DNA of 48,484 nt from Intoshia linei. Taxonomy: Eukaryota; Animalia; Orthonectida. The translations under genes were made by a program, and so were the position numbers. Location of the stretch: contig LWCA01000137.1 of NCBI GenBank assembly GCA_001642005.1, positions 1-48,484 of the forward strand, written 5' to 3'. Below, piece after piece: positions 1,981 to 35,972 of the stretch (position 1 is its first letter; every line of letters starts with the position of its first letter). The notes beneath the pieces were generated by a model that made no database searches, was not told where the DNA came from, and was given only the letters and a program-made list of their open reading frames with translations.

Positions 1981-4410
1981 CATTCCTTCCATTCCGTGAG
2001 GTAACAGCAAAACTAAACCACACTGTCTAATCCATTTAGCTTGACCAGAACTGAGAAATTGATCAATTATACACTGAGCATTATTTACAAAATCACCAAA
2101 CTGGGCTTCCCATATTATCAATGAATTTGGATTATGCATGGAAAATCCCAATTCAAATCCCATCACAGCAAATTCTGAAAGAGAACTATTACACACAGTA
2201 TATTTTTCTTGGTCCAGTGAAATATTATCGAGAGGGACGTACTTTTTACCTAAATTGTCTTGATCCATAATTACATGATGGCGATGACTAAACTGATTTA
2301 TTGAAAAATAAAATCACATAAATCAAAATAAAAAATTTGAAATAACCTAAACGTGCCTCTTTCAACGTCCTGTCCACTTAAACGGACATGAACCTTATCC
2401 AAAAGTAACGACCCAAAAGCAAAAGCTTCGCACATGGCCCAATCAAAAGTTTCAATATCCATCATTTTTTTACGGTTATTTAAGATGCGTAATAAGCCTT
2501 TATAGTAGTTGACTTTGGATTTTGGAATATCGTTGAAAACGTTCCCAATTTTATGAAGAGTGTCTAGAGATATACCAGTTTCTTTAATTTTCATTGGGTC
2601 TTGGTTATCAAAAAAATTATTCCATGGTGAATCTAACCAATCTCGATTGGTATGTATATGTGGGGCGTTTTTGGCGGCATCGTGTCCAGCGTCCAATTGT
2701 TTTTGATAACCTTCAATTTGTTTTTGGTACTCTTCAAGTGTAATTACGTTTTCGTTCAATAGTTTAGTTGAATATTGTTTTAGTAGTTTGGGTAAATTTC
2801 GAATTTTTTGGTACATGCATGGTTGAGTAAATTGCGGTTCATCCGTTTCATTGTGACCATTACGCCGGTAGCACACCAAATCAATCACGATGTCTCTTTT
2901 CTTTTTCATTCTCCATTCAGCAGCCACTTTTGATACGTGCATGACGGCTTCAGGGTCATCAGCATTAACGTGAAGTATTGGAGCATTTATAACTTTTGCA
3001 ACATCAGTACAGTAAATGGAAGACCTGGCATCCCTCGGATCAGTAGTGAATCCAATTTGATTGTTTACAACGATATGAATAACCCCATGCGTTTTATACA
3101 TGTTTAAATCACTTAAATGCAAGGTTTCGTACACTACGCCTTGACCACTGAATGCTGCATCGCCGTGCAGAATAATTCCCATTGTTTTAGATCCATCAGT
3201 GTCATTGTTATAAAATTGGTCAGCTTTGACTTTTCCAAGAACGACTGGCCCAACAGCTTCGAGATGAGAAGGGTTTGCTACCAAAGACATGCTAATGTCT
3301 TTCCCTGAGAATTTATTAACAATTTCATTATGTAACCCCAAATGATATTTTACATCACCACTATTATCACTTGTATCTCCGTGACTTACATCAAATTGAG
3401 CAAATATTTGTTCCAAAGGTTTTCCCAATACATTAGCTATAACATTTAGTCTCCCTCTGTGGGGCATCCCAAAAATATATTTTTCAAGTCCTTGCTCCGA
3501 ACAGACATCCACAATCGTCTTAATAGCTGGTATTAAAACTTCACATCCTTCCAAACCAAACCTTTTTTCCGAAGACCACTTCTTTGCCAAATACTCTTCA
3601 AAATTGGTTGATCTAATTAATCTATTCAGTAATACCTTTTTTTCAACATTGGACATTGTTCTAATATTAGGTGTTTCAAATTTTCTTCTTATCCACTGTA
3701 AACTATCACGATCGGATAAATACGAGTATTCTACTCCAATAGATTTACAATAACTATCTTCCAATCTTTTAATAATTTCTCGCAATGGTAATTCTTTTTC
3801 ATTTGCACCGCCTATAAAAGTTGTTTCAGGCAATTTAAAAACTTTGTCCAAATCAGAGTTTCCTAGATTGAAGGATTCAATCGATAAATTTTTAATATCT
3901 TCAGCAATTTCTGTATTTAATCTGTACGGCATATCCAACGGGTCTAATCGAGATTTTAAATGTCCACGAATTTGAAAACTACGAATAATTCCTTGTACAG
4001 TCAAGTGGTCTCCAATTCTACTATTGATCATGCCATTTTCTAAAATGGGTTTATTTTTGTTTGAAATTTCAAAGTCTTCTTCGGCTTCCATGTTTTTAAA
4101 ATAAGTGTTCCATTCCTAAACAAAAGAATGGAAAAAATAATAAATTAAATACCTTGCTAACTGAATTTGGTTCTTTTTTCCATTCCTCATATAAATTTTC
4201 GAAATAAACGATGGAGGTTCCATTTAACCAGTTGGTTTGGTTGAGCATATCATAATAAGAAAGGTCGACGCCAGATGATCTTTTTCGGTTAGTGAGAATT
4301 TGGTTAAAATTACCTTTATTGGTGGATACAAATTTTGAATAATTTTGAGTTTGAATTTGACTCAACGGAATTTTCCGAAAACACATTTTTAGATTTTTAA
4401 AGGTTAACAT
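1981..4410 (-). CDS. OGDH: 2-oxoglutarate dehydrogenase E1 component, mitochondrial (5' three exons; C-terminal exons not found in window)
   Basis: Exons 4410-4153, 4115-2347 and 2287-1981, joined by a 37-nt and a 59-nt GT-AG intron. Splicing restores ...PNSVSK|EWNTYFKN... and ...ERGTFS|HRHH.... Motifs [34 protein letters not shown] (TPP binding), [12 protein letters not shown] and WEAQFGDF are present. Ends at a donor after LLPHGMEGM. Confidence 0.97.
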
Positions 4411-16155: not shown

Positions 16156-17039
16156 CTAAATTAGAATTAATATAAACATACGAAAATGATATTAAAAATA
16201 AGTTTCAATCATATCAGGGTTGCAAAGTTTTTTTAGATTCCATGTGAAATTTAGACTCTACGGAAAACTCAAAGAAAATTGCAAATGTAATGCATAGATT
16301 ACATTTTATTTATAATTTGGTCAAAGATTCCATGGTTTATATGAGTTTTAATTTGAGTCATTTTTTGATTTACCTAGGAATGAAGGAATAGAAACTTAAT
16401 TGTGTATTTTTATAAGGTTTAATTTGAGTCATGAAAATAATCTTAATGAATTATTTATGAGGAGTTTAAGTGTTTGAAACTACAATAATTAAAATCAAAA
16501 CCTAAACTTTTCTAAGTTGAGAAAACAAAAAGATAAAAGCGCGCTCGAGACTTATTTTAAAGGTGTCATCTTTTCAATCACATTCTCATTTATATCTCAA
16601 AAATGAACACCTAGCACTATAATCGCTAAACCACTGTTCTTATAACAATATCGCCGGTATACGTTAATTATGAGGCAGCTAATAATTTTGAATAATTAAA
16701 TATACGAAATTTAAGTTGTGTCAATAAACAATACTTGAATAAGTTACTAGGCACAAGCAGATGATTAAACAAAACATTACCATAGATTATTAGAATACTC
16801 AAAATTTTGTCTAAATATAAAATAAAATTATCGATAAAACTGTTAAAATCCCACTTTGCAATAAAAAAGCGATTTCATATACTGTATTGTCATAAAATAC
16901 ACCTATATTAAAACACAATAATCCCCAAATATTAATTTATAATCTAAAATTGTAAAATATTCATCTAAATAAATTATGTTAATTTTTACATGTAAGATAG
17001 AATTATTTATACTTAAATAAAATTTTTAACATTATCTTC

Positions 17040-17190
17040 AATTACCTAAGCGACACTGCGTAGATCATTAAGGATGTGGTGTTAGGGTAAGATCGGCATT
17101 GCACAACGCTTGATTGACCCCTACAACTTTGCACAAGGTGCTTAGTTGAGTTTATAATTTATGTGTGAAGGGATAGCGTTCGCGCATCCC
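17040..17190 (+). ncRNA. U1: U1 snRNA, variant copy (5' end AAUUACCUA)
   Basis: Loop I GATCATTAAG (U1-70K site), loop II ATTGCAC (U1A site), Sm site AATTTATG and terminal GCG-TTCG-CGC hairpin. Collinear with the copy at 21792, stems preserved. Confidence 0.9.
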
Positions 17191-17587
17191 CATTTGGAAT
17201 TAAAAAAGATTAAATTAGCTAATTGAAACTAGAATGTTTTGAATTTGATTAGATCTAATTCTCATAATTCATTCACGTTTCAAAAATTGAAAGCAAAACA
17301 TAACTACGGTATTTTAGCATCAGTGGTTGTCCACATTTTTCAGTGTATCGACCTTTAATTATTTTATAATTAGTGGACTACTTCTATAAAATCTTAATCG
17401 TACGCTATCTTATAAATCGATACTTGTATTTTTTTATAAAATTTTTGACCATAGTTTTTTCAATTAAAAATAGTTATTATACAACTGTTTTAAAGTACAC
17501 TTCTTTTGTACTCCTCTTTACTCTTTCAGCTAAAATTTTGATAATATAATAAAACCAGTGCAAATTTGAATCGAAAAAGGTGTTGAC

Positions 17588-17777: not shown

Positions 17778-19335
17778 GGGTAGACTGTAAAAATCATTAA
17801 CGTTTTAATTAATGATTGCATGTTAAAAAAAATATAAATAAACATTACGATCACTGATGTAAGAAAACGAAAACGTTAATCAAATGACTATTTCTCAAAT
17901 TGATTCACGATATTATTTTTCTTATAAATTGCATATATGTAATACATATACATTTATAATAATTTTAATTAATAAAATGATATATGAAACAATAAAAATG
18001 GAATAAGTGTAACAATAATGTTAAAATTGTAATAATGAATAAATCATAAAAAATATATGAAAAAACTATAAAATAAAAAATATGTGTAAAAAATTGTTAT
18101 AAAAAATAAAAATTTATATTATAACGCGGGCCGCATAATTGACACCCCTGGTCTTGACACTGATAAGTTACTCAGAGAGATTTGACGAGTAAATTCAATT
18201 GCATTTTTATTCATTAAAGTAGTGTGTCCATAAGTACTCATAGCTACCATAGATAATTTTAGTCAATATTTTACTTGTAATTTTTCACATTCTTATCTTT
18301 ATTGATAACTTAATTATTGAAGATATTGTTCATTTTAATCGATGTAAAATTGTCACGTAGTTTTGTAAAATAGTCTAGTGATGTATTTTTTTCGTTGCCC
18401 CAAATATTTACTGTGTACCACTAAGGGGTCCACATGGATCCCCTTCAGAACCACTGGTATATATTATACAATATATATTTTAATTTTTATCACCTCAACG
18501 TCTCCGCAAATTTTTATCTAAATCTAATGTAAATATTTTTGATTAATTATTATACTTTTTCCGATCCTGCTCTTAATTTTTAAAATTTTGTCAAAATATA
18601 TTTAGTCTTAGTCTACAGATTTTTCATAAAAATCATAAATAAACTACATTGTATTATATATGTATTGAATTTATTTTTTTGGTAGAATAAAAAAATTCCA
18701 CCCTAACCAGAGCTAGGTGTGTTTGTATCAAGTAACAGTCAACGTAGTACAAAATAAAATTACATCATCAGATGCCAACCTTTCCCTAAAGAACATATCT
18801 ATTAGTGCCTAAATTGGAATAAAAATTGTATACAAAAATTATACATAAATAAAGAAAGCACTGTATTCGATGTTTTTGTCCACCGATAAAACATTACTAC
18901 TGACATTCAAGTAACTAAGTGGCCAAATTTTGGTACGGTTGACACTAAATATAATAATAGATTAGCTTCAATGATGAAAGTAGAAATAGATAAAATGTCG
19001 ATACGATTACTGTTTGCAATTTCTCGAGAAATACAAAAAAAATAAAATTTTTTATTTATCAAAAAACTAAAATTAGTGAATAGTAATTTATTCAAAAATT
19101 TAAATATTTTTGTAATAATGAAGGGTTACAATGTGTAATAACAGATTATTTTTATTTATATTAATCATCACAAAAAGGTGAAAACCTCGAAATGATTATT
19201 CAAAAAAAAATGGGATTCCCAAACTTTCCCAACTTGAGAAACACGCACTTTGTCCGCCCATAACCCATACCATTCACAAATTTACCGTACCGATTATAAT
19301 TTCGATAATATTCCATATTCGTTAAAATAAATTAC

Positions 19336-19670
19336 CTTTTATTGGGGAGTATATTAATTGGTCCATTTTGTGGTAAAATAAAATATAAATATTCTTTAAA
19401 TATATGCATGACATTATTTGATATTTTCTAAAATAGATATATAAAAATCATAAATATTATTACCTCAGACGATATTACTGCATTATAAACAAGTAAAAAG
19501 CATTTTAAAACAAAATATTCAATAGAATCTAAAGTAATACAAATAAATAATATAATAATTTGATAATTTTGAAAGGCTTCGTTATAATTATTAATTAATA
19601 TTAATACATTTGTATCTTTTTTAAACATGAAGGTTTTGTTTATCAAGAACATAGTACTCTTTTCTGATTG
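19336..19670 (-). CDS. Probable upstream exons of the orphan gene
   Basis: ...NAVISSE|gtaata..tag|KISNNVMHIFKEYLYFILPQNGPINILPNK..|gtaatt: a short intron joins two open frames. The link to 16155 is not resolved. Confidence 0.4.
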
Positions 19671-21106
19671 GTTATTTAATAACAAAATCGTTTATCATAT
19701 TCTGAATTATATAGTTTGCTTTCCAAAGTGCAGGTACACGGACCACCATACATGTCAGTATGACAAAAATTTGAAAAAAGTAACAAAGTTAATATTGTTA
19801 ACAACAACATTCTAAGTGACCTGCAAAAAAATATTGTCAAATTAACGAATAGTCATATAAAAGTTTGTACACACCTAAAAGAGATTTCGTTAAATATACT
19901 GCTGGAAAACCTATAAGGCCAAAACCGACCGGTTTTCATACGATAAGAGAAACAAAATATTGGCTCATTATCACGAATTAGACAACAATGCTATTTTGGA
20001 GTCATTATAATTTCGAATGAATAAAAATCCGATGTATGCTTCATTAATGTTACAGTTAAACTCTCAAAAATACACAAAAATACTTTATGACATCTTGCTA
20101 CACTATAAACACAAATTTAGTATATTCCAAAAAGATAATCAATTGTGCTTTGTAACACTAATTTTGTAACTAAATAACACTAATTGTAATTGAAAAAAAT
20201 AATATTTCACTTTTGGAATGGCCCGCCTAAACTCTGGACCTAAATCAAAAAAGACTAAATATTTAAGGTGAAATATCTACTCATCATTAAATAGATATTT
20301 GTTTATATTTTTACTTGGATTACCTGTTTTTAGGGAATTCTTATAATTTGATTTAGATTTTTTTTTCTAGATCGTCTTCAAAAGTTATTCCACTTTTAAA
20401 ATTTTTAGATATTTACATGACTACTTTAACCCAAATGAAACTTAAATGAATAAGTTCATTAATTATTTTGTCAGATTTTTTTGTGGTGGATCTCTGAATA
20501 ACATTAATATGTATTTATATCATTACTTAATATAAAATTTTAATAAATTATAACAATATTCCAACAATTTGTTTGTCAATTGAATCGTCCATCATTATTT
20601 TAATTTTTTCAGTTTATTTCTTAATTTTCATGTTAAAATAAAAAATTCTCTATGGCGGTTGATCTGAACAAACCGACCAGTTAAGTGTAAAAAGTAGCTA
20701 ATGAATAAACCCTTCAATATTCTTTAATTTTATTAAGTTATCTCAAAAAATCAATTTAACTAGTCATAAATTTTAATAATTCCTGATGACAGACATAAAA
20801 TTACAAAATCAAAAATCCAACGCAAAATAACCCATAAATTAACAAATTTTTTTTTAAAAATCATATTTTACATATTTATATTAATTTACAGATCCATAAA
20901 ACACTTTTTTTGATCAAAATATACATTTTAATCATTATAATCCTAGTAGTGAGTAGATAAATATTAATTTAAAATTATCCGGTTACCTGGAATTAAAGTT
21001 TCATTTTATCAAACCGTGTAATATATAATATAAAAAAATATACCTAATTTAATATAAACTTGATAAATATCAGAATTTTTATTATTTGAAGATTTATAGG
21101 TAGTTT

Positions 21107-21479
21107 TCATTGAAAATAGATTTGGATTTTTTCTTTTTTCCCAAGATTTCATCCATACAGGAATCTAAACAATATTACTACAACAAACAAAATTGAATAA
21201 CCATCAAATCGCTTATATCAAGAATAAATTCTTGATCAACGTCAAGTTGAGCCATTTTATAAATGTCTGAATTTGGTAACAAATCTTTGATTTTCTTGAC
21301 ACTCGACTGGGAAAAATCAAATATATTGTTATCATCACGCCAAATGCTATTATTCAACGCAAAACTATTGTCGATAATGGATTTCAGTTTATCTGATTCA
21401 TTCTAAAAATAATTAATTTTAATTAATAATTGTTCATTACCTTTGGAACACTTTCTTTGAAGCTATTCATATGCATCAT
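21107..21479 (-). CDS. Small 3-exon orphan ORF (~100 aa), or the 5' end of the orphan gene
   Basis: MMHMNSFKESVPK|gtaatg..tag|NESDKLKSIIDNSF...DISDLM|gttatt..tag|IPVWMKSWEKEKIQIYFQ*. Both introns are typical ~37-nt ones. Confidence 0.45.
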
Positions 21480-21791
21480 TCAAATAATAGCAATTATAAG
21501 TTGAATTTATTGAAATTAAATTTATCACTGTTACTATAGAATAAAATTAACGAAAAAATATTTTGTATTCTGAACTGATATGACTAGTACAAGATGATTT
21601 CCTATTAATTCAACTCAGCGACTAAATTTTATAGTGTAGTTTAGATTATATTCATATAAATTAATTTGAAAGTTATCTTGTTTGTCAATTTTAGTTTTTT
21701 TTCAAAAAATATAATTGTGCATAAATTATGCAGTGTATTTTTTAAAGATGAAAATAAACTTAATTTAACTAGAAATAAATACTTGTTTGTT

Positions 21792-21944
21792 ACTTACCTG
21801 GAGCAGCATTATGCAGATCATTAAGAGTGTGGTGCCAGGGTAAGATCGACATTGCACACCGTCAGATTGACCCCTGCAACTTGGCACAAGGTGCCTTGTT
21901 GGGCTTACAATTTATGTATGATGGGATTGCGTTCGCGCATCCCT
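21792..21944 (+). ncRNA. U1: U1 snRNA, canonical-type copy
   Basis: ACTTACCTGG 5' end, loop I GATCATTAAG, loop II ATTGCAC, Sm site AATTTATG and terminal GGGAT-TGCG-TTCG-CGCA-TCCC stem-loop IV. Confidence 0.96.
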
Positions 21945-22399
21945 ATTTAAAATAATGATAGAGTTTTTTACTATTGTAACTTTTAGTGTACTAGAATGAA
22001 TTTATACTAATAAAATTGTATTATTAAAAAAGTTTATTGAATATTTTTTATGTAACATTAATAATATCTTAAGTCTTGATTTGTTAGATATTTAAAATCA
22101 TAAAACAAAGCTCTTATTTTGATTTTTGATGTGTCTATTATTTTGATCCTTTACTTATACTTATATAAAAACTAGGTTGACTGTTATGTAATACATACAA
22201 ACAGCACCTAGCTTTGTCGGGGCCACATTTTTATTATACCAAAAAAATAAAATCAGCTTAAAAATCCTACTATTAACTATTATCAACCCTTAAAAGGAGT
22301 GGTTCCTAAATTTGTTTCAGGTTGGACCATCATATCACATTACTTTTACTTTAAAGTGAATTATTCCATTTTTATTTTTTGTTTGCGTATTGATGCACT

Positions 22400-34780: not shown

Positions 34781-35972
34781 TTAAAAATTGACCATATTAT
34801 TTGTCGTAGAAAGTTGACTAAAAGCTCTATAATCTTGTGTAGAAGTAATTTGAGGTAGTTTGTTTAAATTGTGTGAAGGAGAACGTGTATTTTTGGATAA
34901 ATTTGAATGTGGATCATAAAATTCTGAATAAGTCATGTTTACTTTTTTGTCTTTAGAAAACGCAATATTAATATCATTCAAAGAATTCAATTTGTCTATA
35001 ATGAAAATGAAAACTATAAAAAATATAATATACTATTTAAAGAATCGGTCATAATTGGTTTTCCGTAGTTTTTATCTTCCGCGTGGGATAAGAAATAAGA
35101 GGTATTTGGCATTAAATTTTGATTAGTTGCATGCGGAATTAGAGGAGATGTTGGATTATACATTGATTGATTCGTCATTAAATTAGATTTGTCTATATTC
35201 CTATCGTTTAAGATGGAATTTACAAAATTAGACGATTTGTGAACGTTCATGTACGAATCTAAATGAAAAATTTAAAAAATAAAAATATGTAGTGATAAAT
35301 TTAAATACCATTAAAATTGGTATTATCAAAGGTGGAATACGAATCATGATTTAAATTGAGATCGTACCCACTATACGTTGGATAATCGTATCGAAATTTT
35401 TTTTTACGTTTCATGGAGAGAGGTGATATATTGTTGCTAAAAATGCTGTCACTAATAGGAGGTAGTGCATTTATATTGGAAATTTGCTCTTTGGAATCCA
35501 AACAACTTGGTTTCATTGGATTTTTGCAAATGTTCATTGAGTGTAACACATTATTACCATAATATTGGTTTTCAGGTACAAAGTTTGATTTGTATTGATC
35601 TTCTGGTATAGGAGGCAAATTATAAAAATTATTTCTGGGGCTTGAATTGTCACCAATTGGTGGCATAAAATCGTAACTATCAGTAATACTTCCGTTGTAT
35701 TTTTTACTCAACATTCCTACAATATCTTCATTTGTTCTGTTTTCTTGTGGTTCTTTGCTGTCAGCGTATTTCATCAGTACCTTGTTAATGTTATCATTAG
35801 AAAACTGAAACAATCGACCAGACGAATTGAATATGATTAGAGCCACTTCACAATCGCATAAAATGCTCAATTCGTAGGCTTTCTTCATCAAACCAAACTT
35901 ACGTTTTGTAAATGTAACTTGTCTATTTCTTTCATCGGCAATACGCGAGATTTTGATTTTTTTTCTGCCCAT
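34781..35972 (-). CDS. MEF2: Myocyte enhancer factor 2 (MADS-box/MEF2 transcription factor), 3 coding exons
   Basis: [50 protein letters not shown] followed by the MEF2 domain ([16 protein letters not shown]). Exons 35972-35309, 35258-35034 and 34995-34781 join in frame. Confidence 0.96.

What the first reader, a model, noticed from the sequence alone, without database searches (positions are those of the whole stretch)
17040..17190. Variant U1 snRNA re-tuned to GUAAUU donors: a possible two-U1 splice-site recognition system
Seen: the 5' end reads AATTACCTA instead of ACTTACCTG. C4 has become A, which would pair with +5U (UAG|GUAAUU) rather than +5G. The body differs at many positions from the 21792 copy, yet the changes keep pairing: helix H GAGC/GCTT to AAGC/GTTT, stem I GCATTATGC/GTGTGGTGC to ACACTGCGT/ATGTGGTGT, upper stem II GAC/GTC to GGC/GCT. 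The U1-70K loop, U1A loop, Sm site and UUCG hairpin are intact. That pattern suggests purifying selection rather than decay. Local donors are mostly +5T/A with GTAATT recurrent. Inference: a specialised U1 paralogue co-evolved with the shifted donor consensus. Variant U1s are known in other animals; a matched donor shift would be the novelty.
Basis: partly seen in the sequence, partly recalled or inferred. Interest (0 to 1): 0.9.

Follow-up and report, generated by a model that had tools for sequence, protein, structure and literature searches.

The report
Variant U1 snRNA matching shifted donors
This is an intact, evolutionarily maintained extra copy of the U1 splicing RNA in the tiny parasite Intoshia linei. 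Its intron-recognition end has changed to match the GUAAUU intron starts that this genome uses instead of the usual GUAAGU, and it is one of at least 13 U1-like genes with several different recognition ends, but whether it is expressed is untested.

Summary
Window 17038-17194 (+) matches Rfam U1 above its gathering score (74.3 against 69.5 bits). The 5' end reads AAUUACCU-A where the copy at 21790-21947 reads ACUUACCUG.

The two copies are 81.5% identical, while their flanks are at shuffle level. Of 9 changed base pairs, 8 still pair (P=0.0016). No substitution hits the U1-70K loop, U1A loop, Sm site or UUCG loop (P=0.003). The variant has not evolved faster than its neighbour (14 against 10 changes). 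It keeps the upstream ATAAATTATG motif at exactly the shared distance and a shared downstream AGA motif. It is therefore a maintained gene, not a decaying copy.

The genome is Intoshia linei. In 26 evidence-based introns (median 38 nt) the donor is AAG|GUAAUU, with +5 U 62%, A 31% and G 8%, the last equal to background. Genome-wide, GGTAATT and GGTAAAT intron-shaped matches exceed their controls (1.7x) and GGTAAGT does not (0.62x).

"Two-U1 system" is too narrow. At least 13 U1-like genes carry four different intron-pairing ends, and most have AAUUUAC. The predicted pairing gain is small (about -0.7 kcal/mol on +5U donors). Expression could not be tested. Other first-stage notes flagged U1 variants elsewhere in this genome.

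The parts
16969..16978 (+). Upstream motif ATAAATTATG, a candidate proximal sequence element of the snRNA promoter. It starts 69 nt before model position 1 and 71 nt before the presumed first nucleotide A17040.
   Evidence: The same 10-mer starts at exactly -69 in five diverged U1 loci whose flanks are otherwise at shuffle-level identity. The distance from this motif to helix H is constant (78-80 nt) in all classes read. That it acts as a promoter is an inference.
17040..17194 (+). Variant U1 snRNA, presumed mature RNA of about 155 nt. The model match is 17038-17194. The start at A17040 is inferred from the Y-A context shared by all copies.
   Evidence: Rfam RF00003 scores 74.3 bits (gathering score 69.5), E 1.2e-16. 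The lineage model R1 scores 166 bits. The minimum-energy fold is the U1 cloverleaf plus a 3' hairpin.
17040..17048 (+). 5' splice-site recognition arm AAUUACCUA, where the canonical copy has ACUUACCUG.
   Evidence: Read directly and aligned. It is complementary to UAG|GUAAUU. It forms at least 5 contiguous intronic Watson-Crick pairs with 9 of 26 donors, against 1 of 26 for the canonical arm.
17053..17082 (+). Stem-loop I, with the U1-70K-type loop AGAUCAUUAAGG at 17062-17073.
   Evidence: All nine stem pairs are kept, although 7 stem nucleotides differ from the 21790 copy. The loop is identical.
17098..17104 (+). Stem-loop II loop AUUGCAC, the U1A-type binding loop.
   Evidence: Invariant across the six aligned U1 loci.
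17124..17148 (+). Stem-loop III.
   Evidence: Consensus fold of the alignment. It holds the only pair lost in the variant (G-C becomes U.U).
17156..17163 (+). Sm site AAUUUAUG, single-stranded between helix H and the 3' hairpin.
   Evidence: Identical to the canonical copy. Unpaired in the Rfam alignment and in the consensus fold; in the single-sequence fold its first five nucleotides are unpaired and the last three enter an alternative 3' helix.
17170..17190 (+). 3' terminal hairpin with a UUCG loop at 17179-17182.
   Evidence: The loop and inner stem are invariant across classes.
17198..17209 (+). Downstream AATTAAAAAAGA, a candidate 3' box. Its AGA lies 13-15 nt past the RNA end.
   Evidence: AGA aligns at the same place downstream of all six aligned loci. 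The function is inferred.
21721..21730 (+). The same upstream motif, ATAAATTATG, in front of the canonical-arm paralogue.
21792..21947 (+). Canonical-arm U1 paralogue (ACUUACCUG). It lies 4.6 kb downstream in the same orientation and serves as the comparison copy.
   Evidence: Rfam 88.7 bits. It is 81.5% identical to the variant.

Best explanation
The feature is a maintained U1 snRNA gene of the orthonectid Intoshia linei and an old tandem paralogue of the U1 gene 4.6 kb downstream.

Shown:
- It keeps the full U1 architecture, the loops that bind U1-70K and U1A, the Sm site, and the family's upstream and downstream signals.
- Its body has been conserved while its flanks have randomised.
- Its 5' arm, AAUUACCU, is the exact complement of the genome's modal donor AG|GUAAUU.

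Inferred:
- It is transcribed from the shared upstream element, starting at A17040.
- It is assembled into a U1 snRNP.
- It pairs with donors that carry +5U (about 60% of introns), adding the +5 and +6 pairs that the canonical arm cannot form.

It would act as one member of a family of at least 13 U1 genes whose arms (ACUUAC, AAUUAC, AAUUUAC, AAUAUAC) together cover the degenerate donors GUA(A/U)(U/A)U of this genome's 33-60 nt introns.
For: Family membership and structure.

Selection:
- The body is 81.5% identical while the flanks are 48-51%, which is the shuffle level.
- 8 of 9 changed pairs still pair, P=0.0016.
- There are 0 changes in 29 loop and Sm positions, P=0.0027.
- Polarised by class B, 14 changes fall on the variant lineage and 10 on the canonical one, so there is no acceleration.

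Transcription signals: ATAAATTATG lies at exactly -69 in five diverged loci, and a shared AGA motif lies downstream. A U1-70K N-terminal domain gene is present in the genome.

Donors in 26 introns from spliced contigs, an annotated protein and kinase-domain homology: -3A, -2A, -1G | G U A(81%) A(62%) U(62%) U(58%). +5G is 8%, against 6.8% G inside introns.

Genome-wide intron-shaped counts against reversed-pattern controls:
- GGTAAT 1.39, GGTAAA 0.90, GGTAAC 0.73, GGTAAG 0.56.
- GGTAATT 1.70, GGTAAAT 1.67, GGTATAT 1.44, GGTAAGT 0.62.

Pairing in register: 6.15 Watson-Crick pairs per donor for the variant arm against 5.54 for the canonical arm. Runs of at least 5 intronic pairs occur in 9 of 26 donors against 1 of 26.
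Against: - There is no expression evidence. In the one public run found, no contig covers 16810-17142, which holds the promoter and the first 105 nt. One contig starts inside the gene at 17143 and runs 340 nt past its end.
- The energy advantage is small and not significant: means of -4.35 against -4.15 kcal/mol, p=0.19.
- In the 26-intron sample, +5U is not significantly above intron composition (p=0.07). The match could follow from a C-to-A change that is simply the direction of AT mutation pressure (8 GC-to-AT against 1 AT-to-GC change on this lineage).
- It is a single copy. Three genes keep the canonical arm, and at least 7 carry AAUUUAC.
- The variant's upstream element differs from the others just 5' of the core (CTA in place of GTG).
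- The start site is inferred, not mapped.
Confidence: 0.45

Rival explanations
1. It is a working but unspecialised U1 paralogue. Donors in this genome no longer use +5G, so the nucleotide that pairs with +5 is free to drift. AT mutation pressure turned C into A here, and into U in other classes. The RNA works like any U1 by pairing with AG|GUA, and the match to GUAAUU has little functional consequence.
For: - In the sample, +5 composition (U 62%, A 31%, G 8%) is statistically indistinguishable from intron interior composition.
- The mean duplex energy of the two arms does not differ.
- The arm changes at about the gene's average rate (2 of 9 positions), while the loops and Sm site show none.
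- Changes on this lineage are AT-biased.
- Several other classes also vary at this position.
Against: - Two long-diverged classes (A and B, 79% identical) both keep C at this position despite the AT pressure, which suggests the position is still under selection.
- Genome-wide counts favour +5U over +5A beyond composition (1.39 against 0.90).
- The three non-canonical intron-pairing ends each complement an over-represented donor heptamer.
Confidence: 0.35
2. It is a silent or recently inactivated gene copy that merely looks intact.
For: - No contig of the public run covers its first 105 nt, whereas the canonical copy's region is covered.
- It is a single copy.
- Its Rfam score is lower than that of the canonical copies (74 against 84-89 bits).
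- One stem III pair is lost.
- The upstream element differs 5' of its core.
Against: - The flanks are saturated while the body is 81.5% conserved.
- The substitutions avoid every protein-binding motif and preserve pairing.
- The lineage shows no rate acceleration.
- The upstream core and the downstream motif are retained at the exact spacing.
- The public run looks poly(A)-biased and shows no snRNA-shaped coverage on the canonical copy either, so it is uninformative.
Confidence: 0.12
3. It is a U1-like RNA with a role other than constitutive donor recognition. Examples are stage-specific regulation, suppression of premature polyadenylation at AT-rich sites, or a competitor that blocks particular donors, as has been proposed for variant U1s in human cells and planarian stem cells.
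For: Published precedents exist: human variant U1s (PMC3561869) and planarian U1C1/U1C2 with a changed arm base and stem-cell enrichment (PMC6312358). The orthonectid life cycle has distinct stages.
Against: Nothing in the sequence points to it. The arm complements the commonest donor rather than a rare or special site.
Confidence: 0.06

Closest known systems
Co-evolved U1 arms in Entamoeba (ACAAAC with GUUUGU donors), Mastigamoeba (ACGUAC) and Physarum polycephalum (ACAUAC with GUAUGU, with standard and modified U1 variants coexisting), as described in bioRxiv 10.1101/2022.06.08.495308
   Same: The genome's donor consensus departs from GUAAGU, and a U1 gene carries the complementary change in its arm. 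As reported for Physarum, modified and standard arms coexist.
   Different: - The organism here is an animal with intron-rich genes and ultra-short introns, not an intron-poor protist.
- The donor is degenerate (GUAWWU) rather than a strict new consensus.
- There are several arm types in at least 13 genes, not one replaced U1.
- The change is at the +5 partner, not the +3/+4 partners.
Variant U1 snRNAs of animals: human vU1 genes (PMC3561869; splicing capacity tested in PMC10870369) and planarian U1C1/U1C2 (PMC6312358)
   Same: [quoted passage not shown] They have been proposed to recognise particular donors.
   Different: In those cases expression is shown but no matching shift of the genome's donors is known. 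Here the donor shift is measured and the arm matches the modal donor, but expression is not shown. The planarian change is at the -1 partner (C to U), not the +5 partner.
Stage- or tissue-specific U1 isoforms (for example the five Drosophila U1 genes, PMC10645366)
   Same: Clustered or tandem multi-copy U1 genes with sequence variants.
   Different: From my own knowledge, not checked here: those isoforms differ at a few body positions and keep the canonical arm. Here the copies are 56-82% identical across classes and the arm itself differs.

Membership tests
U1 spliceosomal snRNA (Rfam RF00003) | Covariance-model score at or above the curated gathering score | tested here: met
   74.3 bits against 69.5, E 1.2e-16, full-length match to model positions 1-166.
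U1 spliceosomal snRNA (Rfam RF00003) | Four-way junction (helix H, SL1, SL2, SL3), a single-stranded Sm site and a 3' hairpin | tested here: met
   The minimum-energy fold gives this architecture. The consensus fold of six loci has 38 pairs, 14 of them with double compensatory changes.
U1 spliceosomal snRNA (Rfam RF00003) | SL1 loop of the U1-70K-binding type, SL2 loop AUUGCAC, and an Sm site | tested here: met
   GAUCAUUAAG, AUUGCAC and AAUUUAUG are identical to the canonical-arm copy and align to the Rfam consensus. A U1-70K N-terminal domain is encoded in the genome. Binding itself was not tested.
U1 spliceosomal snRNA (Rfam RF00003) | Single-stranded 5' arm complementary to the organism's 5' splice sites | tested here: met
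   AAUUACCU is complementary to the measured consensus AG|GUAAUU and averages 6.15 Watson-Crick pairs per donor. It differs from the near-universal ACUUACCUG at two places.
U1 spliceosomal snRNA (Rfam RF00003) | Expressed, trimethylguanosine-capped and Sm-bound RNA | not testable with these tools
   Only one public run was found, it is kept as contigs, and it is uninformative for snRNAs.
Pol II snRNA gene | Proximal sequence element at a fixed distance upstream, and a 3' box downstream | tested here: inconclusive
   A shared ATAAATTATG at -69 and a shared downstream AGA motif are present in all U1 classes. Pattern searches linking the same motif to U2 and U5 core sequences found nothing, so its generality is unproven.
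Co-evolved U1 and 5' splice-site systems (Entamoeba type) | Genome-wide donor consensus departs from GUAAGU | tested here: met
   +5G occurs in 2 of 26 introns, which equals background. GGTAAGT is 0.62x its control, while GGTAATT is 1.70x and GGTAAAT 1.67x.
Co-evolved U1 and 5' splice-site systems (Entamoeba type) | The modified-arm U1 is the organism's only or main U1 | tested here: not met
   This gene is a single copy. Three genes keep ACUUACCUG and at least 7 carry AAUUUAC. Which class is most abundant as RNA is unknown.
snRNA pseudogene | Loss of promoter, substitutions spread without regard to structure or binding sites, and faster evolution | tested here: not met
   See the observation check.

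The most novel reading that the evidence does not exclude
Intoshia linei splices with a repertoire of U1 snRNAs whose recognition arms have diversified (ACUUAC, AAUUAC, AAUUUAC, AAUAUAC) in step with an eroded donor code, GUA(A/U)(U/A)U. The most numerous class carries a non-canonical arm, and this single-copy gene covers the modal GUAAUU donors. That would be the first animal in which U1 arms and donor sites have co-evolved, and the first multi-arm U1 system matched to measured donor classes.
Probability: 0.3. Interest if true: 0.85.

Novelty: new variant of a known kind. Interest (0 to 1): 0.66.

Why it matters
The U1 arm ACUUACCUG is among the most conserved RNA sequences in eukaryotes. Most lineages with unusual donors have not changed it. 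An animal genome that has lost +5G, and that carries maintained U1 paralogues whose arms complement the new donor classes, would make an open question testable. The question is whether splice-site drift and the recognition RNA co-evolve, and whether several U1 species can share the work.

The result also has practical weight. Standard Rfam thresholds miss most of this family: the scores are 58 and 36 bits for two classes. Gene predictors trained on GTAAGT donors will also perform poorly on this genome.

Tried and rejected
- A de novo intron finder that joined open reading frames through GT..AG gave as many hits with decoy dinucleotides as with the real ones. Adding codon-usage scores gave only about 12 extra introns at about 25% false discovery. 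Both were dropped in favour of introns defined by homology and by spliced contigs.
Other U1 loci were therefore read only through the 80-nt strings that pattern searches print. The arm of the locus at C3240:34803-34957 remains unread.
- The look-up of encoding contigs holds no record for this genome.
- The public run X1 is kept as contigs. It gave six introns but cannot show snRNA expression, ends or strand.
- A metagenome scan with a U1 arm-plus-loop pattern returned 61 loci. None is preceded by the AC or AA that completes a U1 arm, so they are chance matches and were not used.
- Patterns linking the upstream motif to U2 and U5 core sequences found nothing. This is a blank, not evidence against the motif.
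- The idea that the window might use a ciliate genetic code was dropped. Long standard-code reading frames exist and the OGDH protein matches a GenBank entry.
- Exons were joined only inside scripts, from session files, to score candidate junctions offline.

Full report
WHAT IS THERE

Rfam finds two U1 genes in the window, both above the gathering score of 69.5 bits. One is at 21790-21947 (+), 88.7 bits. The other is the reported one at 17038-17194 (+), 74.3 bits, E 1.2e-16. Read directly, the reported copy begins TC-AATTACCT-AAGC where the other begins TT-ACTTACCTGGAGC. The nucleotide that pairs with donor position +5 is A instead of C. One G before helix H is missing, and the next G is A. 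Each RNA on its own folds into the U1 cloverleaf with a free 5' arm. The Sm site is unpaired in the canonical copy's fold and in the consensus fold, and mostly unpaired in the variant's own fold.

THE ORGANISM

The long reading frame at 2298-4091 (-) is 100% identical to a GenBank protein named "Alpha-ketoglutarate dehydrogenase, partial [Intoshia linei]" on a contig of 48,484 bases. The assembly has 41.6 Mb in 3,520 contigs, and the window is 25% G+C. This is an orthonectid, a highly reduced spiralian parasite.

IS THE VARIANT MAINTAINED OR DECAYING?

The two window copies are 81.5% identical over the RNA. Their 200-nt upstream and 80-nt downstream flanks are 48-51% identical, which is the level of shuffled sequence. 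The duplication is therefore old, and the body has been held by selection.

There are 30 differences.
- Nine base pairs are changed. Three changed on both sides, five changed on one side through G.U, and one pair in stem III was lost.
- Random placement of the same substitutions breaks 6.3 pairs on average (P=0.0016).
- None of the 29 positions of the SL1 loop, the SL2 loop, the Sm site and the UUCG loop is changed (P=0.0027).
- Using the second canonical-arm class as outgroup, 14 changes fall on the variant lineage and 10 on its neighbour. The variant has not sped up.

Across six U1 loci of the genome, 14 of 38 consensus pairs show double compensatory changes.

TRANSCRIPTION SIGNALS

ATAAATTATG starts exactly 69 nt before model position 1 in five diverged loci. 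The sixth has ATATATTATG at -74 and a correspondingly shifted alignment. In every copy read, the distance from this motif to helix H is 78-80 nt, and the arm is preceded by TTA or TCA. This points to a start at that A. The RNA would then begin AAUUACCU, two nucleotides shorter than human U1 at the 5' end.

Downstream, an AGA inside an A-rich motif aligns 13-15 nt past the 3' end in all six loci. These are probably the promoter element and the 3' box, but that is an inference. I could not link the upstream motif to U2 or U5 genes by pattern. A U1-70K N-terminal domain is encoded in the genome.

THE DONORS

I assembled 26 introns that do not depend on a splice-site model.
- Six come from spliced contigs of the only public run found.
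- Two come from mapping the GenBank OGDH protein onto the window.
- Eighteen come from kinase-domain loci. There, candidate GT/GC..AG junctions were scored offline against an HMM built from the genome's own intronless kinase domains, and a junction was kept only when it won by at least 4 bits.

The median intron length is 38 nt, and 25 of 26 introns end in TAG. The donor profile is as follows.

| Position | Commonest base | Count of 26 |
|---|---|---|
| -3 | A | 16 |
| -2 | A | 18 |
| -1 | G | 17 |
| +3 | A | 21 |
| +4 | A | 16 |
| +5 | U | 16 (A 8, G 2, C 0) |
| +6 | U | 15 |

Intron interiors are A 40%, C 7.5%, G 6.8% and T 45%. So +5G sits at background level, and +5U is only weakly above it (p=0.07).

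To reach the whole genome I counted intron-shaped patterns: G, then the donor, then 22-38 free bases, then TTTAG. Each count was compared with the tool's reversed-pattern control.

| Donor pattern | Observed | Control | Ratio |
|---|---|---|---|
| GGTAAT | 1605 | 1156 | 1.39 |
| GGTAAA | 1850 | 2049 | 0.90 |
| GGTAAC | 382 | 526 | 0.73 |
| GGTAAG | 248 | 446 | 0.56 |
| GGTAATT | 784 | 461 | 1.70 |
| GGTAAAT | 725 | 435 | 1.67 |
| GGTATAT | 406 | 282 | 1.44 |
| GGTAAGT | 111 | 180 | 0.62 |

The control is imperfect because dinucleotide effects and a dispersed repeat inflate some counts. The ranking is still clear and agrees with the sample. GUAAUU and GUAAAU are the common donors, and the classical GUAAGU is not used above chance. 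Two other first-stage notes on other contigs had reported that +5G is nearly absent. My counts agree.

DOES THE VARIANT ARM FIT BETTER?

In the standard register the variant arm forms 6.15 Watson-Crick pairs per donor, against 5.54 for the canonical arm. It forms at least five contiguous intronic pairs with 9 of 26 donors, against 1 of 26. It is the exact complement of the consensus from -2 to +6.

In nearest-neighbour energy the gain is small. With 9-nt arms the means are -4.35 and -4.15 kcal/mol (p=0.19). The difference is -0.72 on +5U donors, +0.10 on +5A and +2.5 on the two +5G donors. The fit is real but modest. C to A is also what AT mutation pressure would produce (8 GC-to-AT against 1 AT-to-GC change on this lineage).

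THE WIDER FAMILY

Rfam's model finds six U1-like loci in the genome. A model built from them finds twelve, and a pattern search adds a thirteenth on contig C429. The arms were read from pattern-search output.

| Arm | Loci |
|---|---|
| ACUUACCUGGAGC | window 21790, C1710, C504 |
| AAUUACCU-AAGC | window 17038 only |
| AAUUUACUUUUGC | C2162:33056 |
| AAUUUACGACUGC | C429, C1887, C2191, C3240:53224 |
| AAUUUACGAUUGC | C3240:32712 |
| AAUUUACAAAUGC | C2162:31323 |
| AAUAUACGACUGC | C2162:35002 |
| not read | C3240:34803 |

All keep UAC, the partner of GUA. They differ in the partners of +4 and +5 and in the exon-side bases.
- AAUUUAC complements GUAAAUU.
- The C2162:33056 arm complements AAG|GUAAAUU over ten positions, counting one G.U pair.
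- AAUAUAC complements GUAUAUU.

The AAUUUAC copies share about 70 nt of upstream flank, as multi-copy major snRNA genes do, so this class may be the main U1. The variant is one member of a diversified family. Other first-stage notes had flagged the C2162 cluster, a divergent U1 with a changed SL1 loop, and shared upstream motifs. I confirmed these in part.

EXPRESSION

Only one public run holds this DNA. It is kept as contigs and shows spliced mRNA. No contig covers 16810-17142. One contig covers 17143-17531, so it starts inside the variant and runs well past its end. Another covers 21723-21926, so it starts upstream of the canonical copy's start site. Neither looks like a mature snRNA, so the run says nothing reliable about snRNA expression. 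The lack of any contig over the variant's first 105 nt is a weak point against it.

COMPARISON WITH WHAT IS KNOWN

Changed U1 arms that complement changed donors are described for Entamoeba and Mastigamoeba. For Physarum, standard and modified variants are said to coexist. Many other lineages with odd donors keep the standard arm (bioRxiv 10.1101/2022.06.08.495308). Variant U1s with altered arms are expressed in human cells (PMC3561869) and in planarian stem cells (PMC6312358). The paper library holds nothing on Intoshia snRNAs. This finding is therefore a new variant of a known kind: an animal case, with several arm types, tied to a measured loss of +5G.

VERDICT

- Observation: confirmed.
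- A maintained U1 gene: about 0.8.
- Specialised for +5U donors rather than merely tolerated: about 0.45.
- Main rival: neutral drift of an unconstrained arm position in a working U1, about 0.35.
- Silent copy: about 0.12.

Expression and donor preference are the missing tests.

PROCEDURE NOTE

Exons were joined only inside offline scripts, from session files. 

Noticed in passing
L006:1498-1652 (-), L005:1500-1657 (-); genome places C429 about 35600 (+), C1887:44033-44187 (+), C2191:22112-22266 (+), C3240:53224-53378 (-), C3240:32712-32865 (-), C3240:34803-34957 (+), C2162:31323-31475 (-): A numerous class of U1-like genes carries the arm AAUUUAC, the complement of GUAAAUU. Their Rfam scores are below threshold (58 and 36 bits for the two that were scored), so standard annotation would miss them. 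Several copies share about 70 nt of upstream flank. Some have altered SL2 loops (AUUACAC, AUUGCUU). One has a fully compensated SL1 stem.
   Followed up: partly
L002:1501-1658 (-) and L003:1501-1658 (-): Two 97%-identical U1 genes have the canonical arm but an SL1 loop reading GGACAAGAGG instead of GAUCAUUAAG. The U1-70K-binding loop is remodelled even though their Rfam scores are the highest after the 21790 copy.
   Followed up: no
window 18600-21700 (-): A spliced transcript lies between the two U1 genes. It has four introns of 36-38 nt and two unusually long ones for this genome: 391 nt (18945-19335) and 1,515 nt (19529-21043). Its exon translations show no obvious conserved protein. Its 5' part lies about 190 nt from the canonical U1's upstream motif, in divergent orientation.
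   Followed up: partly
window 1981-4410 (-): This is the 2-oxoglutarate dehydrogenase E1 gene, annotated in GenBank as partial. It has introns of 37 nt (donor GTATTT) and 59 nt (donor GTTATT). The C-terminal quarter expected from homologues was not found in the first 1.9 kb of the window.
   Followed up: partly
window 35301-35972 (-): An intronless 223-aa reading frame carries an SRF-type MADS-box domain (Pfam PF00319, E 3e-25).
   Followed up: no
many contigs, for example C30:21340-21387, C65:13264-13311, C111:6622-6669, C161:7999-8047: A dispersed repeat of about 48 nt has the form GGTAAAAC.GGAATTTT.CC.TAAAGGGTTGGTAAATTTTGATTTTTAG. It turned up repeatedly among GGTAAA pattern matches and inflates those counts. 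It looks like part of a common interspersed element.
   Followed up: no
window 17212-17510: The public run's contig differs from the assembly just downstream of the variant U1 by three substitutions and by deletions of 19 and 11 nt (at 17451 and 17499). This indicates allelic or strain variation. The 52 nt of the U1 3' end that the contig covers show no difference.
   Followed up: no
genome place C1687:28540-28674 (-): The genome holds a single match to the U1-70K N-terminal domain (PF12220, 45 bits), so the U1-70K protein is retained in this reduced genome.
   Followed up: no
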